The position numbers and the translations under genes are program-made. 64,000 bases of DNA from Podarcis tiliguerta (lineage: Eukaryota): the NCBI GenBank assembly GCA_965153285.1, contig OZ229111.1; one strand, 5' to 3'. The notes beneath the pieces were generated by a model. The model saw only the letters and a program-made list of their open reading frames with translations, did not search any database and was not told where the DNA came from. This document shows positions 14,083-48,512 of this stretch, one piece after another (the stretch's first letter is position 1; each line of letters opens with the position of its first letter).

Positions 14083-14300
14083 CCGTATTTTTCGCCCTAT
14101 AGGACGCACCGGCCCGTAGGACGCACCTAGATTGGGGGGGGGGGGATAAAGGGAAAAAATGTTATTTCCGCCCCCCCAGGCGTGGGGCTGTGGCGGGGGA
14201 AGCCCGAGCTTCCCCCAACCCCAGCTCCCAGAACAGGAAACTCTCCGCAAGCCCGAGCTTCCCCCGACCCCAGCCCCCAGAACGGGACCCAGAGCCATGC
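14083..14300. mobile_element. Truncated copy of the same Tc2-like family (one TIR end plus a short internal duplication)
   Basis: TA+CCGTATTTTTCGCCCTATAGGACGCACCGGCCCGTAGGACGCACC is the near-exact reverse complement of 41606-41650, and similarity continues for about 95 bp. No second TIR nearby. Confidence 0.85.
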
Positions 14301-28425: not shown

Positions 28426-30139
28426 TGGTACAGGATGAGCATACTGGAAATTAGAAATGGGGGGGAAAGAAGTGTTGTAGAAAAGGCAAGATAGCAACAG
28501 AGCAAAGTTGCACATCAAATTTGCACGAACGTTTTGGACTACTATCTCTGGATAATGTTCTTAACTGTAACTTTAAAAAAGAAACTGATTTCCAATAGAT
28601 CAGATTAGGTAGGAAATAGAAAATTCTGTGAAGATGTATTAAGATGTCTGTATTTAAATGGTACAAAACATTTGTATTTGGCAATGTAATTAATGTAGTA
28701 AAACTAGCTAATTTCCTCCACAAAGTTCTTTTAGTAAACACCCACACACATTCTGTTTTAATAGGATCACATTGCTTAAAATTTTCCAGGAGCCTGACTC
28801 TGACAGCAAATACTGCTGCATCAGCTGGTTAATGGTACAGTTGTGTATAAAAAAGTCATGTTATACTTCCCATCAATTACTTTGTGATTTTCTCTATCTC
28901 TAGATATTAACCTTAGCAGGTTACAGGGGGTGGGGTAGTGGGGTGGGGATTAATACAGTACAAGCATTTCTCTGTTTGATACTTCATTGTTCTTGGATAA
29001 TGTTACTACAATGGGGATCTAGCTCTGGTTTCATTCCAATTAAAAACCCAGGAAATGTTTCTAGTTTTGAGCAGCTGCAGAGGTTTAAACAAAGTCTGTA
29101 TTTCATCTGTATTCCCAGAGTATACATTCCTGGGCTGTGTTAAATGTACTGTATATGTAGTGCAGCACATTGACTTTGAGCTTTACAAATGAAGTTGAAA
29201 AGAATGTAAAACACAAGGGCTGCTGTGAATTTTGTAGAATACTTAAGCTCATTTTTATTCTGTAATTGTTCAGAGAAGCAGGGTATGAGGGAATGGCATC
29301 TCTTTTTGTACCTATGTAACAGCAGCTGATTTACAAGATAAGAGGTGAAGTTTGACATTTATGAGAAGGCACAAATTGAGTCTTCATTGTGATTTGTTAA
29401 GAAGATATTGAGATTATTCTAACAACTTGGTACCTAGGCCTGCCTGAACATTTGTGACCTAGTGTGTAAACTATACCAAACTATGATTTGCTGACTTTTA
29501 TCTGCACGAACTGTTACTATGCTGTATGAAGTTTTTCTAAGCCATCGTAACATAAGGTGTTCTGTGTGAGTGCTCAGAAACCTCAGTTGGTTCAAAATGC
29601 ATATAATACGGGACATATATTATTTCATTTGTGATGGTTATTGATTTGTTTCCAGGTTCGATGCAAAGTACTGGTTTTGACTTCTAAATCTCTCAATAAT
29701 CTGCCTTATCCTAGATGTCCCTGGCCTTCCACTTAAATCAGCATTTGAAGCCTTGCCTTGCATTCCTTCATATGCAGAAAGCAGATGGGCATATGAGACA
29801 GGGCCTTTTTAGTTGTGGAGCCATGATTAGGGAACGACATGATAATGGATTAGGGACCTGTTTCTAAAATTATTTAAATGCACATCACATACGATCCCAT
29901 CATACTTCATAATCGGTCGATATTGCCAATACATATTTTTTTAGAAAAATGATTGCTTTTAAATGTACAATGTGTTGGTTTTCCATAACACATACTTTGG
30001 GGGAAACTACTTAGTTTCTATTTAAAACAAATGTACAAAGGTGGACTGAGATCTACTTTCAGTTAAGCTGTGTTTTTAAAAGAATGTTGTTTAATTCGTT
30101 CGCCCAATAAATGTGTTCTTAATATTTCATTTTCAACAG

Positions 30140-30472
30140 TGCCAGAACCTATTAAGACCAGTTTAAGCCAGCCCCAACCTGCCGGTACCAGTACCAGTAC
30201 TTCCACCAGCACTATTACTAACAATAGCAATGGCAAGCGTGCATCTGCCAATGGGCAGCAGCCAGCTGCATCCCGATACCTGCCTCGTGAGGTGCCTCCA
30301 CGCTTCCGCCAACAAGAACAGAAGCAGCTCTTAAAAAGAGGCCAGCCTCTGCCTACTGGAACTCTGATCAGCACGAGCCCAGCGCAAGGTACTGGACAAG
30401 CAGGAGCAAGTCCTCCTCCACAGCCAGGAGTAGGTGGACATCACCACCCCAGTAAAACTCAGACCCCAACAG
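30140..30472 (+). CDS. TNRC6C: TNRC6C exon ([14 protein letters not shown]...[25 protein letters not shown]...)
   Basis: Acceptor ttttcaacag| and donor CAG|gtaagg. 333 nt, phase 1 to phase 1. Contains the conserved TNRC6 [11 protein letters not shown] motif and lies within ORF 30070..30540. Confidence 0.95.
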
Positions 30473-32120
30473 GTAAGGATTTATGCTGGGAAATGCATTG
30501 CATGAAGAGAACCTGTTCAGATTCTCAATTAAATAGTTAACCTTTAACTCAGAATTGCCTTTCTCCCATTCAGAACATAGTGGTCATTTAGAGGGGAAGA
30601 CTTTGTTCTGTTCTCTGGTCGCAGGAGTACATTCACCTAGAAAGTATGTGCGAGCAGTGTAGAAATGAGACTTAATTCTTCAGAAACACTCAAATAAAGC
30701 CATGTTGGTAGCTTATTAAGCAGTAGTCACATGCTGTTTCTGTACCAAATGTTGCCTGTTTCAACACTGCTGATCTCTGCTTACCATACTCTAGTTGAGA
30801 ACATTGCCCATGCATGCTTCCCTGAGAGGTTAGAATGTAAATGTAATTAACTAAAAGTCTTGAAACCAAGTTAGCAAGAAGCAGCTTGTAATTGTAAAAG
30901 CTTTCCTACAGGCAACAACTAGGACTAATTAATTGAGAAAGTGGTTGTTTTCAGCTAAGTTCTACTGAGGGTAAACCCACTGAAATTACTAAACCCATGT
31001 CTGTCAATTTCAGTGGGTCTACTCTTATTAGAACTTAGTTGGATGCAACCTATGTATCTAAAAATGGTGTACAAAAGGAATACAACTCTCAAAATGGAAG
31101 GTGGATCTCCATGGGAAGAGTGCATTCCTTCAACCAAAACCTTCACAGCCTGATGCTTGTATATCTGAATGGACCAAGTGATGATTGCTGATCAGCTCAT
31201 TCTGAGTCCGTACATCTTGAAGTATATTTTGGCTTAAATAATTGTTATGGTGCTTTTGCTTCCTTGATACCCCATTCTGAGTAGACATTGAAACATATTG
31301 TGCTTGAATATACTTGTACTGAGATAGGCAGATCCTATAAGCTAAGGTGTATGCTATATGGAGGCTTTACAGTTAATCTGTAACTTAAAGGGAGGCACAC
31401 ACCTTTGAAGAGTCTTGCCTGTTCACTTTATTTTGTTAATTGGTAGATTGATTTACTATGTTTTGTCAGAGCTGCATCCTTGCTACAATGTTCAGAAGCT
31501 ATAAGTGTCCTAAAAGCCATGAGGCAATGTTGCCTTCTCAATGGACTTTGGCTTCATGCTAGGTTACATGTGCATAATTTTAAGGTTTGTTCTGATGTAG
31601 CCATAATGCAGATAATCTTAAAATATTCACTGTTACAATAACAACATTAATTTTCTTCATAGTTATTTGTAGCCCACATAGGAAAACATAACACAACATT
31701 TAATCTTGCTTCATGCTTGGTTGACTTCAGGTATTCCTTTCGGATCTTCAGTTCTCATAATAGAAGGCTGTCATGGGGAAAATAGGTATATAACATGTAC
31801 TCAAGTAATGCTTCATAATATTTCTCATTAACCAATCTTCAGAAACGTTTGAAATCACACATCCCTTCTAAACTCTCTGTATCTTCTGCTCAGTCACGAA
31901 TATCTGCCTTGCTCCTCTAACCCCTGTGCAGCAGCTTCTTGTCCACTTGCTTGGATCCACTCCCATCTGTTTCTCCTTGCTGCATTTCATCTCTGCTTTG
32001 AGTAAACTGGACATCCAGGCAAGCAAGAAATATCAGCCTCCCTCCTGCCTGTTTCCAGCAATTCCAATGCAGTTATAGCTCACTGCCTATTGAGAAATCT
32101 TAAATTTTGACTGTTTATGG

Positions 32121-32247
32121 AAGGGGTGGGGAACCCGTGGCCGTCCAGATGTTGGACTACAACTCCTATCATCCATGACTGGCTGGCTGAGGCAGAGGAA
32201 AGTTGGAGTTCAGCAACATCTGGAGGGTCACAGGTCCCCCACTCTCA
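32121..32247. mobile_element. Palindromic hAT MITE
   Basis: ggggtggggaacccgtggccgtccagatgttggactacaactcc...catctggagggtcacaggtccccca. Confidence 0.75.
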
Positions 32248-32371
32248 GTTTATGACATATGTAGATATGATTCAAATATTTCATACTACCAGCTGTTCCC
32301 CTGCATAACCCAATCTGAGGAAAGCTGTCCGCAGAATTTGTCCATGAATGCATGAAGCTGTCTTACATCAA

Positions 32372-32552
32372 AGCTACATACATACTATACCTTTAAAACA
32401 CATTTCTGCCCTCCAAGAATTCTGGGCAGTATAGCTTGTTAAGTGTTGCTGGGAATTATAAATATGTGAGGGGTAAAAGACAATGCCCAGAATTCTCTGA
32501 AGGGAAAGAATGTGCTTCAGAGTTGCTTGAAAGGTATAGTATGTGTGCAGTC
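32372..32552. mobile_element. Palindromic MITE of a different family, inserted in a decayed SINE-like sequence
   Basis: Inverted arms catactataccttt / aaaggtatagtatg and agaattctgggca / tgcccagaattct. Confidence 0.6.
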
Positions 32553-33067
32553 ATAGTCAAATCATTGTTTCATCTGGTTCTGCTTTGTCTATTCCGACTG
32601 GCAGTGACTTTCTAGTGTTTCAGACTGGTCTCTTTCTCAGCAATACCGGAACATGCCAGGTATTGAACTGGGGCTTTCTGTGCAAGTTGGGTCCTGTTGT
32701 ATCTGACCAAAAGGCCATTTAGTCCTTTGCTCCAAATACTTCCTATTCTAACAGTGGTCAGCCATTTGTGAAGTTTGCAAGCAGGACCTACGTGGACCTA
32801 CCTCCAGATTGAGGTAGAGGAATGGGAATAACATAGCCCTCTTCCCTTTCTAAGAAGCTGCTGTTTATGCATTGCAATCATTGTCTGACACCACTAGATC
32901 TTCTGAGTCTTCCTTTTATAATTTTGCCAAATGCTTCTACAGCCTTTAAAATGTGTTTGTGGGAGGGGTTTTTTTGTTTTGTTGTTTTTGTTTTAACTAT
33001 TTGTGCTTTTACCTTGTATTTTTACCTTGTGAACCACCCTGATATGATGGAGGGTGGTATATAAGTC

Positions 33068-33130
<63 letters not shown>

Positions 33131-33167
33131 TGATAGGCAGGCAGGCAGGCAGGGAGGTAGGTAGATA
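33068..33167. repeat. Compound tetranucleotide microsatellite (GATA)n(GACA)n(GGCA)n(GGTA)n
   Basis: Direct reading. Confidence 0.95.
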
Positions 33168-33289
33168 GAGCATACTTTCCCCACCTTTGATATCCAGCAA
33201 CTGGTATCCAAAGGCATATGGTTTCTGATTGTGGAGGTAGTATGCAGCCATCATGGGTGGTAGAAATTGATAGTCTTGTTTTTCAACAG

Positions 33290-33790
33290 CCTCCCTGACC
33301 GAACTGGCTGAGGTTGTCTTGTTGGAGGAACCCAGAGAGGTGGTTTGGGTGACTTCAGCATGCATGGTGAGGATTCCTTATGTTCAGCTCAGGAGTTCAG
33401 GGCAACCATAGGCCTTTTTCAGATAGTCATTGTTCCAAGGCACAGAACAGGGCATAATCTTGATTTAGTCTTCACTTCATGTGAGGAGAGGTGGGTCTGG
33501 AAATAAAGGATGGTGAATATCACTCCATTATCATGGTCAGACCACTTCTTTGTGAGATATGGACTTGCAACGACAATTCTCCCTTGCAAGGGTGGGGAAC
33601 CAGTTAGGATGGTCCACCTGCTGGAGACTGATGGAATCTGATAGATTCCTAACTGCTGTGGGGATTTTTCAGTGGATAGAACAGGTGATCCTGTCAAGGC
33701 CGTAGTTTCGTTATGGAATGGTGAGACACAACTGCTCTTGAAGGCCCTTTCTAGTGCTGTGGAGTCCACTTTGTTTCGTTATATACTGAG
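33290..33790 (+). mobile_element. Decayed L2/CR1-clade LINE ORF2 fragment (APE endonuclease C-terminal part)
   Basis: Ordered motifs LGDFSMH (about 33345), GHNLDLVF (about 33450) and PLSWSDHF (about 33525) correspond to the APE GDFN, GHTLDL and SDH motifs. No continuous ORF remains. Confidence 0.75.
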
Positions 33791-36700
33791 AAAGTGTGGT
33801 TGATGAAATGGGCTGAGCTAGGGTTGGAGCATAAGTTTCAGTGAGCCACTCTATCTCTGTATTGGTTTGAATAAAATAATTTATACAGAATGTTGACACA
33901 ATTTATTTCTCAAAATCTGAGTTGGAACTTATTGTTTGTTTAAGTCAGCTGAAAAATTCAGCAGCTGTTACTTTAAGAAACCATGAGAGTTGGCAACTGT
34001 TCCTGCTATAAATGCATGATATGATATTGTAGCAGGATGAGCTAGTCCTGTGAGAGTTAATGGGCTTTAGGCCAGCTTATATCATAGCTGAGAAGAATTA
34101 CTTGTGGATCTCAGAATATATTCCTTCCCAATAATAGCCTGAGAAAAGATGAGGCTAAAAGGGGTCTACCAAAGCTGATCCAGGCAGTATGAATGAAATG
34201 CAAGGCTTATTTGGAGTAAGTAAATGGAAGGAGGCGTTCTTTCGTAAGAAGGAGTTCAAGATACACTGAGTGCAAATCTTTCCAATCCCTTATCCAAAAA
34301 CAAATGGATAAATGTTTTAGGTATATTTTTTAAAAATCCATTTTATTGATTATTGTGATTAGTAAACTATTTTGCATTTTCCCCAATCTAAATGGTTATG
34401 ACTCAGAGGGGGCAGTGCTGAAGTCTAACGGAAAGTTCTATGTCCTCTGAAACACATTCATTGGGATCAGACTGTGGTTCTTCAGACATGAGGAGGAAAG
34501 CATTCATGAACAGCAGGACAGAACCTGAGCAGTAAAGTCAAAATCAAAAAACAGTTTCAGGGGCTAAATCGTGGTGAGGTTTGAGTTTAATTGAGCCCTG
34601 ATTCCCATTTTTCTTTCATTTGTATGCCTTAATACGCTTAACAGTGATAGAAAAATGGGCTGGCACTTGATTATTGTTTGTAGCAGTTTAAGAATCCTTG
34701 TAAGCAAAAAGTGCCAACATCCTTCTTATTGGAGTTGAAGTCTTACCCCATTTCCCTCCAGCTCTTGTGCCTTTTTGTATTGTTTTTGTGCTTCCTGGCT
34801 ATGCAGTCTTAAGGCTGGCAAAATAATCTTTTCTAGGTATGCTGAATGCTGAAACATTCCTTAAATTCTTAACATTCCTTTGTTTGTTTTTCTCAAAGGT
34901 CTGAAGTCCTAGACCTTAAATGCTGGTTTTTAGTGTGGTTGTAACATTTCATCAAATTGTTACCAGCTAATATGAGATCTTTAATTGAAAATACATGTGT
35001 TGTATCCAGTGCTGTGTGAGTGAAGCTGCACTTGTGCAATGGGACTGCAGCCTTTTGTGAACTCCCAAATATGCTCTGGAGGCCTGCCCCCTTTTGGGGG
35101 TGTGGGGGACTATAGAGGACAGGACAGGAAGGTGAAGGCACCCTCAGCAGCATTTGGGTGCAACCCTATGTATTTTAATATGTTTATTCTTGAAAGACAG
35201 TTATGCTGCAGCCTCTATGCAAATTGCTTTATTTTATTCTTCCTAGTGGATTAGTTCATGTGGAGTTATACATAAACCTTAGGGTTTTGATTGAAATAGG
35301 CTGGGTTTAGAATGCATTCTCAGTTATAGCAGTGTGATTCTGCTTTGTCCTTTATTTAGGTTTTTAATTCTGCCTAGCCTTGATATTTCTGGGCGGGGAA
35401 CATATGAAAACAATAGCAGTAAAATACTTTAATAAGATAGGAAAATAAATCTGCCATCAGGTTTCATATGGTTTTGAAGCACATTCTGCTCAATCTTAAA
35501 ACAAAATGATTTTAGTTTCTTGGTTGCACATCAAATGTTTGAATGTCTGGAGAAGAACTCCACTTTTGGCAGAGGGCCTTGGATAGATTTTCTAAGTGCT
35601 GATGCTGTTGAAATCTAAATATGTAAGTGGAGAACCAACAAGAATGCTAGCACCAAATGTACACTTGAAGGAAAGATGACAGGAAGGAGAAGTAATGGAA
35701 CTGGAGGAGTTTTATGCTTTCCAGTATATCTTTAAACTGAATGAATAATAAAATTGCTAAGATACAACATAAATTTCCATGGGCAGTAATCAGTTACCTA
35801 ATACATAAAATATGTATGCAAATAAATGCCATATTTGTTAAAACATTATTATTGCTAAACTGTTTCTACCCTACTCTATCAGAGCACTTTACATATGGTT
35901 GCCAGGTGATTTCTGATCCAGGCAGCTTTACTTTCATTTCTTCAGCAGTAGAACTGTTGAGTGCATTCAGACCATTTTTGAGCATTATTGTTCCATATTT
36001 TGCTAATTAAAAACATAGTTTCATGTAGTATAGCTGACGACTTTGAAAAGCAGATGTGTTTTGGAAAACTCTCAAACTAGAGTGAAAATTAAAGGTGGGT
36101 ATGGAAGTGGAAAGCTACACACATTCCAAAATATAAGGACAACCACTTTTGTGCAATGCCTAAACAATAACTTAGCATTTAAAGAGAAGTAGACTTGTGC
36201 ATGCTATTTAATTTCTTAAAGATGGGTGACATATCTGTGACCACTATTTTAGATACACCTCTGCACATAATTTATGAGACCTTGTTAAAACTGGATGCTA
36301 GCTTAAACATTCAAACTTCACTGAATTACAAACGATTGCATTGCCTTGATTATCTTGAGGTCTAAAACTATGAAAAATATTCCTATAAATGCAGTTTAGT
36401 CCAAAGTTCACAAAGAATGAAAGGAGAATTTCCCCAGAATTCTGTAGGTTCTGATATATTTGTTAATATCCCCTTTTTAAAACCTTGTCACTTGCTGTAC
36501 CTGTTATATGATACTTATTGAAATTCAGACCCCTGATATTTCGAAATTTCTGAGTGATAGCTAATTAAGCCATATTTGGAGTAGACCCATTGAAATCAAG
36601 GTGCTTACATTACATAATTCCATTGATTTCAGTTGTTCTACTCTGAGTATGACTAATATTGGATATTGTCCACTGGTTGCCAGAATACGTTTCTTGTATT

Positions 36701-38484
36701 ATAATATGTTCCTACATTATGTTCCCAAAATACATTAAGTGCTTACTACACTTTTCATCATCATATAAACATGAAATTTAAGTAGTAGTTTGCTTAAAAG
36801 ATTTTGTCCCTGAGCCGAACATTAAAATGTGTCTTAATATAATTTTATTTCTCAATGGGGGAGAGGGAGGAGAGTGAACAAATTAACCCACTACCCAGTG
36901 GGGTATATTGGAAACTGAATGAGAATTCTTCAAGGCTATCATATCATTAAAGTTTGGCTACATGGAGAAGGGGGTACAGAACGGTCAGAAGGAGTGTGTG
37001 AGACATGGCCTTTGCATCTAATAATAGCTGAGCCTTAAAATGTTTGTCTCGAGGTTAAGGAAGAAGAGCATCACTTTGGTAGTTGGCTAAACTTGGCATT
37101 TGGGAGGCTGTGAAAAGTGTACTATGTAATCAGTAACCTTTGCTGCCTTACAATGGAGTTTTTGTATATTTTTAGCATGGCTAATCGGTTTTGACTGGGT
37201 TGGAAGTTGACCTGCTCTTCCTGCTGCTTATGTCCCACTTGAAGTCCTAATCTTCCTTTGGGATGTTTGTGACATAACACTTACTTGCTGTGGTGGAGAG
37301 GAAGGTGCCTATCATGTAAAAGAAGTTTAGGATTTCAAATGACAATTCCAGATAAATAGATTAATTTCTAAGCAGAAAGCTGATTTTAATTTATCTCCTA
37401 AAATGTATGCACATGTTTGTTTCAAGTTACATATACACAGATATGTTGTCCTAAGCATTATGATACTCTGTTAGAGGTGGCCACATTATTTTATTTATTT
37501 AAATGCATTTATAAATGTCTTATTTTTAAAAAAACCTCTGTGCGGTATACAATATTTCCGTGTAAAATTATATTAAAAAGTAAAATTACCATTTTTGTGT
37601 GCTTAGAAGATATTGCAATTGTAACTTGCACCAAAAAGAGAACACTGCTTTTATTTTCTGCTTGAGACTTGCCTAAAAAAATTCCAGACATCTGAGAAAG
37701 TAATATAACTGGAGAGTTGTAACTCTCTTTTTGCAAAAAGAAAAATATTTTCTGCAGGGCTGAAAGAAAAGAATAGCTTTAAATTGATAATCTGTAATAA
37801 ACTACATGTACACCACCTTTGGTTCTATGATGGAAGAAAGTCAGAATATAAAAGCAACAAAGGGGAAAAAATGGAAAACAGCATTAGTAATTGCTGCACC
37901 CATTACTTAGTGACATATAGGTGGTTGGGTGTAAGACTGGAAAAGTGGTTTTAATTCCTAGGGCCAGCATCACATTTTGGGGTTGCCTTTGTCATGGTTT
38001 TAAATGCCAAACTTAAACTTGTAGGTGCTTGGCTACCAGGTGCTTGGGAGTCTTCCAACATTGGCAAGATCCTGCCAACAGCTGATCTCTCTATCTAGTA
38101 TGTCTGTGAGTAATTGGAATAGTTTGGAACACATTTTAAATACCTTTGAAGTCTACCATGTTTAAAGGACAACCAAGTAGCTACAAGTGCAGAGTATAAC
38201 TCTTTCCAGATATACATTCTGGAGTGAAATATATTCCTAAATTCCCATCCCATCCCCATAGGATGCCTGACAACTATAGCTCAATTCAGGACACCTTTGG
38301 GATGGAAAAGGAAGACAGATGTTGGTTAATAGGGCAGAAGTAATTTTATTTCCTCATAAACTAATGTCTGGCTTTTCAGTATTTAGCAATTGTTAGAAAC
38401 TAACTTGTAAATAGTACTTTAGTACTTTGAACACACCACAGTGGATTTTTAAAAATTAAAAATACATATTTGATATATTTGTAG

Positions 38485-38924
38485 CAGGGCTCAAAATTAG
38501 CAGGTGCATTTTGCACCCAAAGATTCTCCATTTGCGAGCTCCTCAAAAAGTCTGAGTGCCATTTTTTTTGCGCCTGGTTATCACTCAAGGATTACTGAAA
38601 TATATGTGCTTTGAAGTCTCAAAGTATATGTTAAGGATAGACAATATGTTAAGGAGTTGAACAATAAAGAGTAGAGCGTTTTGAAAACTGAAGTACGGTA
38701 CCAATACTTTTATTTTAAACACCAAATTAAACATGTACTAACAATTTTTTCTAAAAATGTGATTTTAACAATGTGTCACTTATGTGAATTGCATATTAAT
38801 TCATGCTTATCAAAATAATAAATAAGTGTTGCTGACCCCCCTCCCCCTGGCGTCTAGACATTCTGTTTTGGCGCCCACAACCCAGGTCCCAGAAGCCATT
38901 TGGCTCCTAGCTATTCCATCCCTG
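38485..38924. mobile_element. Possible older hAT-like non-autonomous element adjacent to the Tc2-like element
   Basis: Begins CAGGG and ends CCCTG, with weak subterminal inverted similarity. The TSD is not convincing. Confidence 0.35.
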
Positions 38925-38936
38925 TTTCTAACACTA

Positions 38937-41650
38937 CCGTATTTTTCGTCCTATAAGACGCACTTTTTCCCCTCCAAAAATGAAGGGGAAATGTGTGTGC
39001 GTCCTATGGGGCGAATGCAGGCTTTCGCTGAAGCCTGGAGAGCGAGAGGGATCGGTGCGCACCAACCCCTCTCGCTCTCCAGGCTTCAGGAAGCTATCCG
39101 CAAGTCTTGCAAACCTGGCGGGAGGTCCCGCGGGCTGCCAAGGCTTGCGGGCAGCAGCCTGCAGCCCAAAAGCTCGGGGGACAGCGGGGAGGCGCAGCGC
39201 CGCCACCCCGCTATTCCCCGACCTGGTCTGGAGGCTGGCGGGGGGGGGGGAGAAGCAGGCTTGCTTTCCCCCCCCCTGACAGCCCCACAACCTCGGAGGA
39301 TAGCGGGGAGGCGCAGCGCCGCCACCCCGCTATTCCCCGACCTGGTCTGGAGGCTGGCGGGGGGAGAAGCAGGCTTGCTTTTCCCCCCTGCCAGCCCCAC
39401 AACCTCGGAGGATAGCGGGGAGGCGCAGCGCCACCACCCCGCTATTCCCCGACATGGTCTGGAGGCTGGCGGGGGGGAGAAGCAGGCTTGCTTTTCCACC
39501 CTGACAGCCCCACAACCTCGGGGGATAGCAGGGAGGCGGAGCGCCGCCACCCCGCTATTCCCCCACCTGATCTGGAGGCTGGCGGGGGGGGGGAGAAGCA
39601 GGCTTGCTTTCCCCCCCTGCCAGCCCCACAACCTCGGGGGACAGCGGGGAGGCGCAGCGCCGCCACCCCGCTATTCCCCCACCTGATCTGGAGGCTGGCG
39701 GGGGGGAGAAGCAGGCTTGCTTCTCCCTCCTGCCAGCCCCACAACCTCGGAGGATAGCGGGGAAGCGGAGCACCGCCACCCCGCTATTCTCCGACGTGAT
39801 CTGGAGGCTGGCAGGGGGAGAAGCAGGCTTGCTTCTCCCTCCTGCCAGCCCCACAACCTCGGAGGATAGCGGGGAGGCGGAGCACCGCCACCCCGCTATT
39901 CTCCGACGTGATCTGGAGGCTGGCAGGGGGAGAAGCAGGCTTGCTTTTCCCCCCTGCCAGCCCCACAACCTCGGAGGATAGCGGGGAGGCGCAGCGCCGC
40001 CACCCCGCTATTCTCCGACGTGATCTGGAGGCTGGCGGGGGGAGAAGCAGGCTTGCTTCTCCCTCCTGCCAGCCCCACAACCTCGGAGGATAGCGGGGAG
40101 GCGGAGCACCGCCACCCCGCTATTCTCCGACGTGATCTGGAGGCTGGCAGGGGGAGAAGCAGGCTTGCTTTTCCCCCCTGCCAGCCCCACAACCTCGGAG
40201 GATAGCGGGGAGGCGCAGCGCCGCCACCCCGCTATTCCCCGACCTGGTCTGGAGGCTGGCGGGGGGAGAAGCAGGCTTTCTTCTCCCCCCTGCCAGCCCC
40301 ACAACCTCGGAGGAAAGAGGGGAGGCGGAGCACCGCCACCCCGCTATTCTCCGACGTGATCTGGAGGCTGGCAGGGGGAGAAGCAGGCTTGCTTCTCCCT
40401 CCTGCCAGCCCCACAACCTCGGAGGATAGCGGGGAGGCGGAGCACCGCCACCCCGCTATTCTCCGACGTGATCTGGAGGCTGGCAGGGGGAGAAGCAGGC
40501 TTGCTTCTCCCTCCTGCCAGCCCCACAACCTCGGAGGATAGCGGGGAGGCGGAGCACCGCCACCCCGCTATTCTCCGACGTGATCTGGAGGCTGGCAGGG
40601 GGAGAAGCAGGCTTGCTTCTCCCCCCTGCCAGCCCCACAACCTCGGAGGAAAGCGGGGAGGCGGAGCACCGCCACCCCGCTATTCTCCGACGTGATCTGG
40701 AGGCTGGCAGGGGGAGAAGCAGGCTTGCTTCTCCCTCCTGCCAGCCCCACAACCTCGGAGGATAGCGGGGAGGCGGAGCACCGCCACCCCGCTATTCTCC
40801 GACATGATCTGGAGGCTGGTGGGGGGGAGAAGCAGGCTTGCTTTTCCCCCCTGCCAGCCCCACAACCTGGGGGATAGCGGGGAGGCGGAGAACCACCACC
40901 CCGCTATTCCCCGACCTGATTTGGAGGCTGGGGGGGGGGGAGAAGCAGGCTTGCTTTCCCCCCCTGCCAGCCCCACAACCTCGGAGGATAGCGGGGAGGC
41001 GGAGCACCGCCACCCCGCTATTCTCCAACATGATCTGGAGGCTGGGGGGGGGAGAAGCAGGCTTGCTTTTCCCCACTGACAGCCCCACAACCTCGGGGGA
41101 TAGCGGGGAGGCGCAGCGCCGCCACCCCGCTATTCCCCGACCTGGTCTGGAGGCTGGCGGGGGGAAAAGCAGGCTTGCTTTTCCCCACTGACAGCCCCAC
41201 AACCTCGGGGGATAGCGGGGAGGCGCAGCGCCGCCACCCCGCTATTCCCCGACCTGGTCTGGAGGCTGGCGGGGGGAGAAGCAGGCTTGCTTCTCCCCCC
41301 TGCCAGCCCCACAACCTCGGAGGATAGCGGGGAGGCGGAGCACCGCCACCCCGCTATTCCCCCACCTGATCTGGAGGCTGGGGGGGGGGAGAGAGAAGCA
41401 AGCTTGCTTCTCCCCCCCCCCCACCAGCCCCACAACCTCGGGGGACAGCGGGGCAAGCCGCTGCCCCACGGAGGCTAGAGAGGCTGTCCCTGAAGGCAGA
41501 AGAGGGAGACGGTGCGCTCCGTCTCCCTCTTCTAGCTTGGGTATGGCTGCGCAAACCTGGGGGGGAAATAAATTTTTTTTTCTTGATTTCCCCCCCCAAA
41601 AACTTGGTGCGTCCTATGGGCCGGTGCGTCCTATAGGGCGAAAAATACGG
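38937..41650. mobile_element. Non-autonomous Tc1/mariner (Tc2-like) DNA transposon carrying an internal tandem array
   Basis: TIRs CCGTATTTTTCGTCCTATAAGACGCAC and GTGCGTCCTATAGGGCGAAAAATACGG, with TA on both sides (38935-36, 41651-52). CCGTATTT termini are recalled as typical of Tc2-group elements. No transposase ORF. Confidence 0.88.
39172..41468. repeat. About 20.5 copies of a 112-bp GC-rich tandem repeat, two hairpins per unit
   Basis: The unit can be read directly. Recurrent ORF boundaries at 39784, 39896, 40008, 40120 ... 40792 are spaced exactly 112 bp apart. Confidence 0.97.
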
Positions 41651-43197
41651 TACTTTGTAGCAGATATGTTGACATATCTGATATATTTGCACCTCCCTCC
41701 TTCGACTAGTCATTTACACACATTGACAGCCTTGGGATGGGGAAACCTAACAAGCCACCAACCCAGTGGTTCAAGGTGATATTCAGTGTCACCAGCCCAT
41801 CCTGTGGGCATCTGCAGGCATCCTTGCTTTAGGCTTTCAGGTGTCTCTTGAAGACTTTCTTACACTGACAGGCCTATGCAGTATTTGATCTTTCTTTTTT
41901 TTAAAGTTTTATAATTTTTTAATATTGTTGTTGGATTATGAGAAGGTGGTACAGAAATACTTTTAAAAGAAAAATAAAATTTACAGAAAAGAGAATCCAA
42001 GAATTTGCAAAATGAGAGCAAAAAAATTAAAGAAAATACTGAAACCCAAAAATATAAATTCTTAAGAGAAGGTAAAGCAGTTGCAACAACTGAGGAATTG
42101 GTGGCAGCTGCTTATGACTAAATGTTCAAAGAGACATCAGTGATACAGTGTCATTTAATAAAAGAGATTGTTGGCCATGTATACCCTGCACTTAAAAATG
42201 GTGCCAAAGTAACCTAAATGCATAGAGGCTTCAGGATGTAGAAATTTGCAGGCAAATTCATGCAGACTAAGCACATTTGCATTTTTAATTTTACACGCTT
42301 TTTTCAGTCACACAGAGGACAGTACACTGTGCAGGTAAATGAACCCTTGCATGCTGAAGACTGCAGGACATTTGAAGTTCTGACCACTGGAAATTTTCTC
42401 CTTTCTCACCAGCTCCTCTGGCTACTTCCATTAGCAATGCCTGCTCATTTTTGAGCCTAGCATATAACTCTTATGGGCTAGAAACTTACTTTTTAAATTT
42501 ACAGTATATATATCTTAAATTCACAGAATGTTGGCTATGTTCCTTCATATGCGTGGTGCAGTTTTATGTTTATATTTTTAGGAGCTAGATAATGTTTTGT
42601 GTGCAATTTAACTTTTTTGTTTCTGAATAATTGCAGCTGATTCTTCTCCTATGAGATCCGCTGTGGCAAGTTGATGCATATTTTAGTTACTTCTGGGAGT
42701 ACTTATCCTATGCTAGGACAACTATATTATTAGTAGTAATCCCTATTGGTGGTCGATTTTATAGTCTTAAAGGCTGGATAGATGGATGGCACCGTAATTC
42801 ATAGCTTGTATGCTATAAATCGCCTGATTTGCTCTCAAAATCTAGGAAGGTTGACAATGAACTTTAAGCAGCAGTAAAAGAGTTCCCTCTGCCATTCCAT
42901 GCTTTGAAATTGCGAGAGGGAAAAGCACTTACAGCCTATAATGTATTGTTTGAGCACGCAGTGACAATGCTGTACGCTCACAAATAGAAGCTGTGATTTT
43001 TAATAGACTTGCATGTTTTCAGCTTTCGCGATAAAGGCAGAGAAGTAATTAAGCACCTGGAGGCTTGCCAGGTTCTATATAAGGTTTGTCCCCAGTATTG
43101 TAGTTAGTGCTGGTATGCCAAGTGTGTGTAGCACTGCTGTTTAGAGAAGGAAAGAAGAGGATGGAAACATGAAGGAGGCAGGAATGTATTTGCATGC

Positions 43198-43851
43198 AGC
43201 CAATCGGCAATATGCGGCTGTTCTTTTGGCTGACTTTCAAAAACCAGAAGAAAAGCAGCCACCGTGCTAATTGTGGCTAGGTCTCGAAGTGAAAATGTTT
43301 TGTGACAGTTGAAAGAATTTAAAGAGGAAGGAAGATCGGTTTAGTGTCAGCTGCAATTAGATAATCAAAGCTTTAAAATCCTCATCTGTTGATACCTTAC
43401 CCAGAGTTAAGGGGGCTGTGTGCTGCTGGAGGTGGGGGTAGGAGTCTCCCTGTGAGGAAAGGGCATTTCCAAAGCCAGCACAGCTAGGGCCTGAGCAAGC
43501 TTGCAGGTTGTCTGGGCGCACACTTGCACTGAGCGATTTTCTTGGCAGCTCTACAGGATGAGGCTCACTCTGTACACAGCCGACATATTGAAGCCGAGAG
43601 CCCAGGCGAACCTAGATGCAGGAGGGGAGACAGCTCTGCACACAATGTAGCGTCTCCTAGGATGGTTGGGCAGCACCTTTTCTCAGGTATTTCATTACTC
43701 GTTGGCCCCTATAGAGCAGCAAGGGGGGGGGGGAAGGGGGCAAATGGCATCTGCTTCTGTTAAATCAGTTTATTACATAATGTTTCAGAGACAGCAGCAG
43801 CAGCACAGCGTCCTAAGCTTTTGGCTGCCTTTCAGGTTTGATAAAATGGCG
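43198..43851 (+). promoter_or_regulatory. Possible internal promoter region (CCAAT box, YY1-like motif)
   Basis: AGCCAATC at 43198 and AAAATGGCG at 43843, with locally raised GC/CpG around the candidate exon. Confidence 0.35.
43549..43686 (+). CDS. TNRC6C: Candidate alternative TNRC6C exon: 138-nt in-frame cassette, or first exon starting at ATG 43662 (MVGQHLFS|D)
   Basis: Acceptor gattttcttggcag| and donor CAG|gtattt are both phase 1 with no stop between them. ATG 43662 is in a strong Kozak context (AGGATGG). Splices in frame to exon 45924. Confidence 0.5.
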
Positions 43852-45923
43852 TCCTCAGAGAAAGAGCTGCTTGCTAAAGATATGCTGCGCTGGGCAAAAA
43901 AATGAAGTTGTTATTTGTCATTATCTACTGCTGTTTGGTTTTGGAGTGTTAGTGTTTCATGGAGTACTCACTATCTAATAATGAAGAATGCTCTTTTTTA
44001 CGCTGCTCAGCTCTTTTTCTGAACGCATTAAAGGTTCCCACATCAGACGGAACATACTTTGTAGCATACCGTAGTGAAGAAAATTAAAAGAGTAATAGGC
44101 TTTTCCACATGCGTTGCCTAATTTTGGATTTTGTCTCTAAATAAAGCTGTTTTATTTAGCGTTCTCATCTCTTAACCCTTCCACATTTGCATATGCCTTT
44201 CTGGGAAAGTCTTGACAGCTTCAGCATTTATGGAGTCAGTGTTGTTGTGAAAGCAAACTTGCAGGACAGATTCCCACTTAAATGTTTGTGCTTTTTGAAT
44301 TCCTGACTGCATAAACAAGTATTTCAGCTACTAGAATGAAAGAAACAAATAGAAAGAAGCTGACTTCTTGGATGCTTTCAAATTTGTACTAGTTTTGAGA
44401 TTAGTTCTGACCTCAGATCTAAGTGCTGATCAAATCAGTCAATGTCTGTTCATGTTGGTAAACATACAAGCTTAACCATTTCCCATTGAAATTGAATGGA
44501 GTTTTTTTGTTCCAGGATGCACATTTATAGTGAACGTCCATGTTTTTCTTCATAAGGTTACATTTTCACTCTGATTTTGAGATTGCTTTCTGATATGTTT
44601 TGATCATTTAAAATACTGATTATGATATCAGATCTTGGAGTTACATTAAAATGTTCATTGAGGTCATGGTACTGATTACTTTGTATTTCCGTCAGGGAAG
44701 TTATTGTTGCCCCAAATTAGAATTGTGGAATTTTGTCACATCGGTCTTAAAAAACTCAAATTGTCGAAACCTACAGCATTAACAGTTTAGGGGCTGGCTT
44801 ATATCTGGACGAGGCACAGTGTAACAGCTGTTTGAGAAGATCCAGCTTATTTGTAGAGGGAGATTGGCCTGTCAATCAAGTATCATTTTAAAGTCCCAAA
44901 TCATATATGACAAGTACAGAACATGCAATTTATATTTAATAGCTATCAGTGCTATAGTACAAAATGTAAGTGATCTTCATTATTAACTACCGTCATAGTT
45001 ACCTTTTTTTTAAAGCACCCATCTTTTTGATTGTTCATATACATTAAATGAATGAAAGGCCTCAATCCTGCAGCTATTTACAAGCGGTTCTCTCTATTAT
45101 ACCTTGTGATTTCTAATCTATGACCTTGGTCTAAGAGCCTAGGCCTGTCCTTTGCTGTGATGTGGACTAGTATGTTGGCTCCTGTTCGAAGAGACCCAGT
45201 CCTGTGCACCAGAACTATGTGTGGCTCCACCTTCTGAGCTAGAGTGATAGTATGTATGCCAACGAGTACCAGACGTGTCATCAAAGTCTTAGTTTACAGT
45301 GATAATACTTTCTAAAGTATTTCTTTGATTTCATTTCATGCATTGAAAACATACAACTGAAAGTGATAACAACTCATATGTTTGAGAAATATTTTAATAT
45401 TGGAAATCAGTCCTCACAGTGAAGTTTTTATCTCTGTTTCTAAATTTAACAAGGCATGAATAACTGTTCGTTGACCACAGAATACGCTTGATTGGTTTTG
45501 TAGATTTTTTCTTTCATTTCTAGTTCCCCTTTAATAGTTCAGCTTAAAATGTATGTGGCATATAGGAAAATATTGGAAATTGCATGCCCCAAAGTATTGC
45601 TTATTATATCTGACCCTATTAGTGCAACCTAATAAAAGAGAAATAGTACTATTGTCTGCATGTAAATCCTTTGTGTATTAGCACTGAATATACTTGTTTT
45701 TTCAGAACCTAGAATTCAAAATGCATTATTATGCTTATTGAAGAATTTGTTTGTATTCACAAGCCGTGCTTCTCCAAGGCTTAGTGAAAGTTGGGAACCC
45801 CTACCCATAAGCTAGACTATAAAGGACTATAAAGAATGTAAACATAACAATCAAGCCAGAGTTCAACTGATGTATCTGGGTCATTGGATAGCAGACTAAT
45901 TTACATCATGTTTAATTTTTCAG

Positions 45924-48512
45924 ACCTTGGTCACAGCGGATTGGGAGACCATTATGAGAATACTCACTGGGGACAGCAGCCCACTTTCCGAAGTGAAGCC
46001 AATTGCAGCTGGGATAAAGTGATAATAGACAGGACTGACAAGGAAGCGTGGCCTTCCATTACAGGAACTGAGACTGAATCTGCCTCAGAATGTACTACAG
46101 ACACTGACTCTGCCTCCAACTGTGGCTCAGAGAACAGTAGCATGGCTACAGGGAGTGCCCAAGGCAACTTCACTGGACATACAAAGAAACCCAATGGCAA
46201 TAATGGCACCAATGGAGCACTCATCCAAAGCACCTCTAACCAGAGTGCCCTTGGAACTGGTGGGGCAAATGGTAATGGAAATTCAGCCAGAGTGTGGGGT
46301 GTTGCCACAGGTTCCAACTCTGGCTTAGCTCATTGCTCTGCCAGTGGTGGGGATGGAAAGATGGACAACATGATTGGAGATGGTAGAAGTCAAAATTGCT
46401 GGGGTGCTTCCAACTCAAATGCTGGCATTAATCTTAACCTTAATCCAAATGCCAATCCAGCTGCCTGGCCTGTACTCGGACATGAAGGAACTGTGGGAGC
46501 AGGCAACCCTTCCAGTATTTGCAGTCCAGTCAGTGCCATAGGTCAGAACATGGGCAACCAGAATGGGANNNNNNNNNNNNNNNNNNNNNNNNNNNNNNNN
46601 NNNNNNNNNNNNNNNNNNNNNNNNNNNNNNNNNNNNNNNNNNNNNNNNNNNNNNNNNNNNNNNNNNNNNNNNNNNNNNNNNNNNNNNNNNNNNNNNNNNN
46701 NNNNNNNNATGAACTCTTCACCAAACCCTATCAATGCAATGCAGACAAATGGACTGCCGAACTGGGGCATGGCTGTTGGCATGGGGGCCATCATTCCGCC
46801 CCACCTGCAAAGCCTTCCTGGTGCTAATGGGACATCAGTTTCTCAAGTCAGTGGGGGAAGTGGTGAAGGAATGGGCAATTCAGTGTGGGGGATATCCCCA
46901 GGTAATCCTGCCACAGGAAACAGCAATTCTGGGTTCAGTCAGGGGAATGGAGACACTGTGAACTCAGCATTAAGTGCTAAACAAAATGGATCCAGCAGTG
47001 CTGTACAAAAGGAAGGGAATGGAACAAGTGCATGGGATTCGGGGCCTCCTGCTGGTCCTGGGATCTTAGCATGGGGCAGGGGCAGTGGCAACAGTGGCGT
47101 TGGTAATATGCATTCTGGTGCTTGGGGCCACCCAAGCCGCAGCACCAGTAATGGCGTTAATGGTGAATGGAGCAAGCCCCCAAACCAGCATTCCAGTAAT
47201 GACATCAATGGGAAAGGATCAACAGGGTGGGATAGCTCTAGTGTTACCAGCCAGAATCCTGCCATGCAGCAGGGCAATGAACAAATAAACTCTTGGGCCA
47301 AAGCTGCAGCATCTGGCAACACAGGTAGTGAAGGCAGTAATGATAGCAATGGGAGTCAGAATGAAGGCAGTACTGGGAGGGAAGGAACTGGAGAGGCTCG
47401 AAGAAGAGACAAGGGAATGCTAGACCAAGGACAAGTCCAGTTGCCAAGGAATGACCTTGACCCAAGGGTTCTGTCCAACACTGGATGGGGACAGACTCCT
47501 GTAAAACAAAACACTGCCTGGGAATTTGAAGAATCCCCAAGGTCTGAACGAAAGAATGACAATGGAACTGAGGCCTGGGGTTGTGCAGCTACTCAGCCTT
47601 CAAACTCGGGGGGCAAGAATGATGGGTCCATCATGAACAGTACAAATACCTCTTCAGTATCTGGGTGGGTCAGCTCTCCACCTGCAACAGTTCCAACTAA
47701 TACAGGTTGGGGCGACAACAATAACAAAGCGCCAAATGGCCCAGGGGGATGGGGAGAGCCGGCAAGTTCTACTGCTGTCAATAATGCTGCTGCTGCCAAA
47801 AGTGGCCACACTTGGAGTGGGACCACAAATCAGGAGGACAAGTCGCCTACTTGGGGTGAACCTCAGAAACCCAAATCTCAAAACTGGGGAGATGGACAGA
47901 AATCGAATCCAGGCTGGACTTCAGGGGGTGGAGATTGGGTTGATTCCTCATCTGTCCCTGGACACTTGGGAGATGGGAAAAAGAATGGTTCTGGATGGGA
48001 TGCTGACAATAGAGCAGGGTCTGGCTGGAATGATACTACACGTTCTGGGACCACTGGATGGGGAAATGGCACAAACAGCAAGGCTAATACAGGTACGAGC
48101 TGGGGGGAATCGTTAAAACCTGGTCCTCAACAGAATTGGGCTTCTAAATCCCAGGACAACAACGTGAGTAATTGGGGAGGAGCTGCTTCTGTTAAACAGA
48201 CTGGATCAGGATGGGTTGGTGGACCAGTGCCAGCCAAACAGAAAGATAGTAGTGAAGCAACGGGGTGGGAAGAGCCCTCTCCACCATCCATTCGGCGCAA
48301 GATGGAGATTGATGATGGTACCTCAGCTTGGGGTGACCCAAATTACAATAACAACAAGACTGTAAACATGTGGGATAGAAACAATCCTGTAATCCAGAGC
48401 AGTACCACAACCGCCACCACTAGCACCACCATTATCAACGCAAACATGGCTGAACCTCAGCCACCGCACCAGTCAAGTGCCCAGTCAAACCGGTCCCCGC
48501 TGCTTGGTCCAG
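45924..48512 (+). CDS. TNRC6C: TNRC6C large GW/WG-repeat exon (Argonaute-binding domain)
   Basis: Acceptor taatttttcag| and donor CAG|gtatga. 2589 nt, phase 1 to phase 1. Contains MATGSAQGNFTGHTKK (ATG at 46142), many GW/WG repeats, and the AGO-binding motifs DPRVLSNTGWGQTP and WEEPSPPSIRRKMEIDDGTSAWGDP. Confidence 0.98.
46569..46708. other. 140-nt run of N inside the large coding exon
   Basis: Direct reading. The reading frame is continuous across it. Confidence 0.99.

What the first reader, a model, noticed from the sequence alone, without database searches (positions are those of the whole stretch)
38937..41650. Tc2-like transposon carrying about 20 head-to-tail 112-nt double-hairpin units in an intron of a core miRNA-pathway gene
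Seen: TA-flanked TIRs enclose about 20.5 copies of a 112-bp unit in which almost every base can pair. Hairpin 1 is TCGGAG-GATAGCGGGG-a-GGCGG(agca)CCGCC-a-CCCCGCTATT-CTCCGA. Hairpin 2 is GGCTGGCAGGGGGAGAAGCA(ggct)TGCTTCTCCCTCCTGCCAGCC. Only linkers of about 5-10 nt separate them. Known: the array is transcribed as part of the TNRC6C pre-mRNA, and MITEs can both seed satellites and give rise to small RNAs. Inference: this is a mobile cassette producing about 40 consecutive stems of roughly 20 bp. It could act as a Microprocessor/Dicer/ADAR substrate, a cruciform array, or a satellite-seeding element. Because TNRC6C is the AGO effector, processing here could feed back on the pathway. Function is unproven, and neutral slippage expansion is the null hypothesis.
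Basis: partly seen in the sequence, partly recalled or inferred. Interest (0 to 1): 0.85.

Follow-up and report, generated by a model that had tools for sequence, protein, structure and literature searches.

The report
Lizard MITE with amplified palindromic minisatellite
A 2.7-kb non-coding cut-and-paste transposon sits in an intron of the TNRC6C gene, and its GC-rich double-hairpin core has been copied head to tail about 20 times; it looks like ordinary selfish DNA growth, not an RNA-silencing device.

Summary
Two 27-nt inverted ends (25/27 matched) with TA on both flanks enclose 2,714 bp. Inside are 20.3 tandem copies of a 112-bp unit, each folding into two hairpins of about 23 bp. The element lies in a roughly 15.5-kb coding intron of a + strand GW182 gene whose closest named relatives are TNRC6C.

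The functional reading is not supported:
- Both strands fold equally well, so these are DNA palindromes.
- Covariation does not exceed the controls.
- Paired and unpaired columns vary equally.
- The stems, with 4-6-nt loops, are far shorter than the ~35 bp Microprocessor needs.
- No Rfam family reaches its threshold.

The array shows the usual marks of neutral expansion: a homogenised centre (96.6% identity), divergent edges (88%), G-run length slippage and changes at CpG sites.

A truncated second copy in the window has the same end but a different duplicated interior. A 296-bp relative without an array occurs in a public metagenome contig.

This scan has already noted similar MITE-borne arrays on other DNA of this genome. 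MITEs carrying tandem repeats are known, for example Xenopus miDNA4 and clam DTC84.

Reads and orthologous contigs were unavailable, so copy number, expression and small RNAs are untested. The "Tc2-like" label is also untested.

The parts
38935..38936 (.). TA at the left flank (putative target-site duplication)
   Evidence: the same dinucleotide is at 41651-41652. It is only 2 bp, so weak on its own.
38937..38963 (+). Left 27-nt terminal inverted repeat
   Evidence: 3 matches in the window, 0 expected in shuffles.
38937..39157 (.). Left arm (221 bp): TIR, an inverted copy of the inner TIR motif forming a hairpin (about 38945-39015), the 62-nt perfect hairpin at 39028-39089, and a third palindrome that resembles a short form of hairpin 2
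39158..41453 (.). Tandem array: 112-bp unit x 20.3, each unit made of hairpin 1 (about 22 bp) and hairpin 2 (about 23 bp). Units at 39743-40750 are 96.6% alike; the outer units are 88% alike.
41454..41650 (.). Right arm (197 bp): palindrome at 41498-41533, A/T-G/C spacer, doubled inner-TIR motif (17-bp direct repeat at 41606-41639), and TIR
41624..41650 (-). Right 27-nt terminal inverted repeat
41651..41652 (.). TA at the right flank
14083..14300 (+). Truncated second family copy. It is TA-flanked and shares its TIR plus 95 nt with the right end of the main element. Its interior is a different GC-rich sequence with a 39-nt direct repeat at 49-bp spacing.
30139..30465 (+). Upstream coding exon of the TNRC6C-like gene (approximate limits)
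   Evidence: 77-87% identical to residues about 29-137 of homologues P0019, P0020, P0028 and P0013
45923..48511 (+). Large GW-rich exon of the TNRC6C-like gene (approximate limits; holds the masked N run 46569-46708, left untouched)
   Evidence: homologues join it directly to the 30-kb exon, so about 30466-45922 is one intron that contains the element

Best explanation
This is a non-autonomous class II (cut-and-paste) transposon of MITE type. It is inserted at a TA site in a roughly 15.5-kb intron of TNRC6C.

Its interior is a chain of GC-rich DNA palindromes. Two adjacent palindromes, together 112 bp, have been amplified head to tail into a 2.3-kb minisatellite. The inferred mechanisms are hairpin-promoted replication slippage or template switching, and unequal exchange. 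Recent rounds homogenised the centre of the array.

The hairpins are a property of the DNA, which is palindromic on both strands. They are not an RNA shaped by selection. The element is most likely selfish or neutral intronic DNA that is transcribed passively with the pre-mRNA.

Shown here: the anatomy, family membership, intronic position, lack of an RNA-specific signal, and the homogenisation pattern. Inferred: the mechanism of expansion, neutrality, and transposition by a TA-targeting (Tc1/mariner-type) transposase.
For: - Element boundaries: the TIRs and TA flanks. The GC-rich, CpG-rich block (GC 0.67, CpG o/e 0.54) ends exactly at the TIRs, against flanks of GC 0.36-0.40 and o/e 0.14-0.26.
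- No coding signal in its ORFs.
- Family evidence: a second, truncated copy has the same 95-nt end but a different interior that is itself duplicated. A 296-bp relative without an array, with both ends alignable, lies in L020.
- The + and - strands fold equally well, -90.8 and -90.5 kcal/mol. The DNA fold gives z = -11.5.
- Covariation: pairs with a change on both sides number 2, against 1.5 in shuffles (245/500 reach it). The covariation score of 0.043 is no better than partners slid by -2 or -3 columns (0.049, 0.051).
- Variable columns: 28% of paired against 30% of unpaired. There are 42 G:T against 22 A:C mismatches, and about 20 of the G:T come from one fixed pair.
- Array pattern: centre 96.6% against edges 88% identity, two identical units, no higher-order period.
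- Mutation pattern: G-run length variation, and variant sites at CpG.
- The same kind of element is described elsewhere: miDNA4-Xt, DTC84, Xstir (PMC12054243, PMC12628747, PMC3879986).
Against: - No reads, orthologous locus or genome-wide search was available. Insertion as one unit, the copy number and the absence of small RNAs are therefore unproven.
- A 2-bp TA duplication is weak evidence for a single insertion.
- The units are young and closely related, so the covariation and constraint tests have little power to exclude function.
- One pair does switch A-U to G-C in 6 units.
- The whole-array minimum-energy fold is a long fold-back duplex, with 75% of pairs spanning more than 112 nt. That form would be a plausible ADAR or Dicer substrate.
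Confidence: 0.8

Rival explanations
1. The array is a functional RNA module. Transcribed within the TNRC6C pre-mRNA, its stems or a long fold-back duplex are processed by Drosha or Dicer, or edited by ADAR. This would yield small RNAs or alter splicing or expression of the AGO partner, giving feedback on the miRNA pathway.
For: - It lies on the transcribed strand inside a coding intron.
- Folding is extremely stable.
- The whole-array minimum-energy fold is a long duplex.
- There are weak, sub-threshold resemblances to many miRNA models.
Against: - Stems have a median of 23 bp with 4-6-nt loops, against a required stem of ~35 bp; the 4-nt loops of the central unit (AGCA, GGCU) hold no UGU (PMC6298569).
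- The hairpins are not at intron ends, so they are not mirtrons.
- Both strands fold equally well.
- There is no covariation or stem constraint.
- All Rfam matches are far below the gathering scores, on both strands, and spread over dozens of unrelated families.
- Scan notes list similar arrays in introns of unrelated genes.
Confidence: 0.05
2. The element acts at the DNA level as a mobile CpG-rich island or cruciform array, for example as a methylation target, an alternative promoter or enhancer, or a replication or transcription obstacle inside the intron.
For: - There are 165 CpGs in 2.7 kb, with o/e 0.54 against 0.14-0.26 in the flanks and GC 0.67.
- The DNA hairpins are very stable.
Against: - CpG o/e is below the usual 0.6 island criterion.
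- Several variant sites among the units lie at CpG (G/A at four CpG sites), as methylation-driven decay would give; direction was not polarised.
- No transcript start, exon or conserved motif was identified.
- There is nothing specific to this locus.
Confidence: 0.08
3. The structure is partly an artefact or a composite. Either the copy number is inflated or collapsed by assembly, or two separate half-elements happen to flank a pre-existing satellite.
For: - Tandem arrays of near-identical units are hard to assemble.
- TA flanks are expected for any TA-targeting element, so they do not prove one insertion.
- Reads were not available.
Against: - The array has an ordered, non-periodic series of unit variants with no gaps.
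- There are only two TIRs, in inverted orientation, with different left and right arms.
- The composition shift coincides exactly with the TIRs.
- The array grades into unit-like sequence in both arms.
- The relative in L020 has the same left and right arm design around a short interior.
Confidence: 0.07

Closest known systems
miDNA4-Xt, a Tc1/mariner MITE of Xenopus tropicalis that carries a satellite motif (Scalvenzi and Pollet, as described in PMC12054243 and PMC12628747)
   Same: - Vertebrate, non-autonomous element assigned to Tc1/mariner.
- Plan of inverted end, (tandem repeat)n, inverted end.
- Repeat number varies and can grow into longer arrays.
   Different: - miDNA4 is 300-600 bp and AT-rich, and most copies hold a single motif. 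This element is 2.7 kb and 67% GC with 20 copies.
- Here each unit is two near-perfect palindromes.
- No sequence comparison was possible.
DTC84 / pearl-type tandem-repeat MITEs of bivalves (PMC3879986)
   Same: - Flanking 'cassette' with short inverted repeats around a core of tandem repeats.
- A palindrome in each repeat was proposed there as the hotspot for length change.
- Every copy is different.
   Different: - DTC84 has up to five core repeats, an AA target duplication and a linked microsatellite.
- The variant order in DTC84 is fixed.
- It is from a different phylum and has no sequence relation.
Xstir (Xenopus) and FEDoR (Rana temporaria) composite MITE/tandem-array elements (PMC12628747, PMC12054243)
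   Same: - Stem-loop-driven tandemisation of MITE-internal sequence.
- FEDoR is kb-sized, not AT-rich, and has a forward and a reverse inverted-repeat site close together at an end. The left arm here does the same (38945-39015).
   Different: - FEDoR has that doubled arrangement at both ends and three conserved regions. Here the right end has a direct doubling, not an inverted one.
- No homology was tested.
Tetris foldback transposon of Drosophila virilis (PMC4079207)
   Same: A DNA transposon whose internal tandem repeats supply building blocks for satellite DNA.
   Different: In Tetris the repeats are part of long terminal inverted repeats. Here the TIRs are short (27 nt) and the array is central.
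Intronic pri-miRNA clusters
   Same: Many consecutive hairpins within one intron of a host gene.
   Different: - Stems are about 23 bp rather than ~35 bp.
- Loops are tetraloops.
- There is no strand asymmetry and no conservation signal.
- There is no Rfam membership (PMC6298569).

Membership tests
MITE / non-autonomous class II transposon | Terminal inverted repeats | tested here: met
   27-nt TIRs, 25/27 matched, 0 expected by chance
MITE / non-autonomous class II transposon | Target-site duplication | tested here: met
   TA on both flanks, and also at the second copy. It is only 2 bp, so weak.
MITE / non-autonomous class II transposon | No coding capacity | tested here: met
   ORFs inside are repeat read-through with no Pfam match. 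112 is not a multiple of 3.
MITE / non-autonomous class II transposon | Multiple dispersed copies with the same ends | tested here: inconclusive
   There is one further truncated copy in the window and a relative in L020. Genome-wide copy number could not be measured; scan notes are unchecked.
MITE / non-autonomous class II transposon | Small size (about 100-800 bp) | tested here: not met
   2,714 bp as found. The arms alone are 418 bp, so the excess is the array.
Tc1/mariner superfamily, Tc2 group | TA target-site duplication | tested here: met
   also seen in TA-flanked relatives in metagenome contigs
Tc1/mariner superfamily, Tc2 group | TIR similarity to an autonomous element that encodes a DD(E/D) transposase of that group | not testable with these tools
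   No Dfam/Repbase library and no copy of this genome was at hand. No transposase lies next to any TIR match.
Tandem-repeat-containing MITEs (miDNA4 / DTC84 kind) | Plan of inverted end, (tandem repeat)n, inverted end | tested here: met
Tandem-repeat-containing MITEs (miDNA4 / DTC84 kind) | Repeat number or content differs between copies of one chassis | tested here: inconclusive
   Copy 2 has another interior with 2 repeats and L020 has none. No second copy with the 112-bp unit was available.
pri-miRNA / miRNA cluster | Stem of ~35 bp with basal and apical determinants | tested here: not met
   Median 23 bp, maximum 26 bp, loops 4-6 nt. Criterion taken from PMC6298569.
pri-miRNA / miRNA cluster | Structure conserved by selection (covariation, one-strand signal) | tested here: not met
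   Power is low because the units are young.
pri-miRNA / miRNA cluster | Match to a curated RNA family | tested here: not met
   Best match is 39.4 bits against a gathering score of 100. Hits fall on both strands and on many families.
pri-miRNA / miRNA cluster | Discrete small RNA reads | not testable with these tools

The most novel reading that the evidence does not exclude
This lizard genome may harbour a MITE chassis that repeatedly amplifies different GC-rich palindrome cassettes into kb-long, almost self-complementary arrays and seeds them into gene introns. In the TNRC6C pre-mRNA the 2.3-kb array would fold into a long duplex that is edited or diced. Transposon-derived dsRNA load would then be coupled to the expression of a core silencing factor.
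Probability: 0.05. Interest if true: 0.7.

Novelty: new member of a known kind. Interest (0 to 1): 0.3.

Why it matters
It is a clear vertebrate example of a transposon interior growing into a minisatellite, a proposed route from mobile elements to satellite DNA. I found no description of such MITE-borne arrays in squamates in the searchable literature; only SINE-derived satellites are described there (PMC10702118).

It also warns annotators. Dozens of stable hairpins in an intron of a silencing gene can arise from palindromic DNA alone and draw weak miRNA-model hits on both strands.

For TNRC6C itself nothing suggests an effect. The scan has already met the same phenomenon elsewhere in this genome, so this instance adds little beyond its size.

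Tried and rejected
- The findings look-up by sequence was blank.
- An exact 27-nt TIR scan of metagenome contigs found nothing. The 18-nt scan gave 82 loci: 12 belong to a TA-flanked MITE family, one (L020) holds a closer relative, and I take the rest for chance.
- A full-text search for the TIR start found only unrelated C. elegans primers.
- A paralogous empty site in the window was not found.
- TRF did not report the two-copy repeat in copy 2; the repeat finder did.
- Pfam on the big GW exon pieces was blank. Only the 57-kb exon hit Ago_hook.
- The protein atlas leaned weakly towards TNRC6B (0.87, below its own reliability line). I set this aside in favour of the named high-identity TNRC6C homologues.
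- A higher-order repeat was rejected: identity is flat over lags 1-7.
- Coding potential of the long ORFs in the array was rejected.
- The ORF beside the TIR in L020 is a host MAN1-type gene, not a transposase.

Full report
**Observation.**
- A 27-nt motif occurs at 38937-38963 on the + strand and at 41624-41650 on the - strand. The two copies differ at two positions, both transitions. None is expected in 100 shuffles.
- TA directly precedes the left end and follows the right end.
- Between the ends, Tandem Repeats Finder reports one array at 39158-41453: period 112, 20.3 copies, 92% matches. It is the only large tandem array in the 64-kb window.
It has 46 base pairs in 112 nt, -90.8 kcal/mol, and z = -11 against dinucleotide shuffles.
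- Across all 20 units I count 41 top-level hairpins with a median of 23 bp (maximum 26) and loops of 4-6 nt.
- The two arms outside the array (221 and 197 bp) are also chains of palindromes. They include the 62-nt perfect hairpin at 39028-39089 noted separately by the scan.

**Gene context.**
- The large GW-rich ORF at 45884-48586 (+) has its highest-identity named relatives annotated as TNRC6C. A second tier near 40% identity is, I presume, the paralogues.
- An exon near 57.3 kb matches the Argonaute-hook domain (PF10427, E = 4e-8).
- Four homologues (P0013, P0019, P0020, P0028) align to the exon at about 30139-30465. In P0020 and P0028, alignment to the exon starting near 45923 begins within two residues of where the first ends. 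The element therefore sits in one coding intron of about 15.5 kb, on the transcribed strand.
Transcription itself is inferred, not observed.
- The masked N run at 46569-46708 was left as it is.

**DNA palindromes or an RNA shaped by selection.** Every test points to DNA palindromes.
- The reverse strand folds as well as the forward strand (-90.5 against -90.8 kcal/mol). The DNA-parameter fold gives the same picture (z = -11.5).
- On the alignment of the 20 units, 93.8% of pair cells are standard pairs. Only two pairs change on both sides, no more than shuffles give (245 of 500 reach it).
- The covariation score (0.043) is not above that of partners slid by 2 or 3 columns (0.049, 0.051).
- Stems are no more constrained than linkers and loops: 28% against 30% variable columns, and 4.8% against 6.0% minor-allele cells.
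- G:T mismatches, tolerable in + strand RNA, number 42. About 20 of these come from a single fixed pair. A:C mismatches, tolerable only on the other strand, number 22.
- The one pair that switches A-U to G-C in six units is what palindrome-templated repair also produces. In the two end units the G-rich and C-rich arms of hairpin 2 lengthen together, which hints at the same process.
- These tests have low power because the units are young copies of one another. They fail to support function rather than excluding it.

**Fit to the small-RNA machinery.**
- Pri-miRNA recognition needs a stem of about 35 bp plus basal UG, apical UGUG and downstream CNNC determinants (PMC6298569). Here the stems are about 23 bp with tetraloops that lack UGU. 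The hairpins are not at intron ends, so they are not mirtron-like.
- Rfam gives 197 weak matches scattered over dozens of unrelated miRNA families on both strands. The best is 39.4 bits against a gathering score of 100. This is a generic hairpin effect.
- One point keeps the dsRNA idea alive. Each hairpin is palindromic, so the array as a whole is nearly self-complementary (104-nt inverted matches at 72-74%). The thermodynamic optimum of the whole element is a long fold-back in which 75% of pairs span more than one unit.
- Co-transcriptional folding should favour the local hairpins. A long duplex, if it formed, would suit ADAR or Dicer better than Drosha.

**How the array grew.**
- Units 5-13 (39743-40750) are 96.6% identical on average, and two of them are identical. 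The outer units average 88%.
- Identity does not depend on lag, so there is no higher-order repeat.
- Differences between units are mainly transitions (74 of 112). Several variant sites lie at CpG (G/A at four CpG sites; direction was not polarised). There is also length variation of a G run.
- At both borders the array grades into unit-like sequence of the arms. The left arm ends in a shortened hairpin-2-like palindrome followed by a linker that aligns with the unit junction. The right arm begins with the first 25 nt of a unit.
- The simplest reading is that two neighbouring palindromes of the original interior were duplicated by slippage or template switching at hairpins. Unequal exchange then expanded and homogenised them, most recently in the centre.
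- The element is still CpG-rich (o/e 0.54, GC 0.67) compared with its flanks (0.14-0.26, GC 0.36-0.40). The shift coincides with the TIRs. This fits a single, fairly recent insertion.

**Family.**
- A third TIR at 14083, again preceded by TA, starts a truncated copy. It shares 95 nt with the right end of the main element. It then continues with a different GC-rich interior that has its own 39-nt direct repeat at 49-bp spacing, containing a small palindrome.
- A scan of public metagenome contigs with the first 18 nt of the TIR gave 82 loci. Twelve belong to a TA-flanked MITE family, some of them complete elements of 130-150 bp. I take the others, apart from L020, for chance matches.
- The scan also found a 296-bp, 44% GC element in L020 (6029-6324). 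Its left 53 nt and right 50 nt align with the arms here, including the doubled inner-TIR motif (scores 54 and 39 against a shuffled maximum of 35). That relative has no array, which supports the view that the array is a secondary growth inside a MITE chassis.
- No transposase was found next to any of these ends. A Tc1/mariner-type assignment therefore rests on the TA duplication alone, and 'Tc2-like' is untested.
- Earlier notes of this scan list many MITE-borne palindromic arrays in this genome: 99-bp and 118-bp units, and introns of GRIN2B and CYTH3. One follow-up reached the same conclusion for a 99-bp array. These are unchecked notes. They agree with what copy 2 shows here, and they make the TNRC6C location look like one hit among many in long introns.

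**Comparison with the literature.** MITEs carrying tandem repeats are established.
- miDNA4-Xt in Xenopus is a Tc1/mariner MITE of 300-600 bp. It is AT-rich and mostly carries one motif, sometimes more (PMC12054243, PMC12628747).
- Xstir is another Xenopus example.
- DTC84 in a clam has a palindrome in each repeat, proposed as the hotspot for length change (PMC3879986).
- FEDoR in the grass frog is a kb-sized composite element.
- Tetris in Drosophila virilis is a foldback transposon (PMC4079207).
- For squamates my searches found SINE-derived satellites (PMC10702118) but no MITE-borne arrays.
- The present element is thus a new member of a known kind. It is notable for its size, its GC content and the near-complete palindromy of its unit.

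**Limits.**
- Copy number, insertion polymorphism, expression, small RNAs, editing and methylation are therefore untested.

**Verdict.**
- The silencing-pathway function is unsupported and the neutral null is favoured at about 0.8.
- Interest is modest at 0.3.

Noticed in passing
L007 10-138; L024 259-405; L040 1110-1238; L041 2608-2755; L051 8-155; L073 955-1101: Metagenome contigs, several from the same projects, hold a TA-flanked 130-150-bp MITE family. Its ends begin with the same 20-22 nt as the lizard TIR. This terminal motif is therefore shared by MITEs of at least one other, unidentified eukaryote.
   Followed up: partly
L020 6029-6324: A 296-bp, 44% GC MITE without a tandem array. Both of its ends align with the arms of the window element, including the doubled inner-TIR motif. 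It sits 150 bp upstream of a 460-aa ORF with a MAN1/Src1 C-terminal domain. The host organism is unknown.
   Followed up: partly
window 14083-14300: A truncated family copy with the same right-end chassis but a different GC-rich interior. That interior already carries a 39-nt direct repeat at 49-bp spacing containing a small palindrome, a possible early stage of the same amplification.
   Followed up: partly
window 39177-39288 and 41313-41433: In the first and last units the G-rich 5' arm and the C-rich 3' arm of hairpin 2 are both lengthened (15/13 and 15/15 nt against 10/11 elsewhere). Arm lengths therefore change together, as palindrome-templated repair would give.
   Followed up: partly
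window 38945-39015: The left arm holds an inverted copy of the inner TIR motif about 45 nt inside the TIR, forming a hairpin. The right arm holds the same motif as a direct 17-bp doubling (41606-41639). The two ends are therefore built differently.
   Followed up: no
window 46569-46708: A 140-N masked run lies inside the large GW-rich TNRC6C exon.
   Followed up: no
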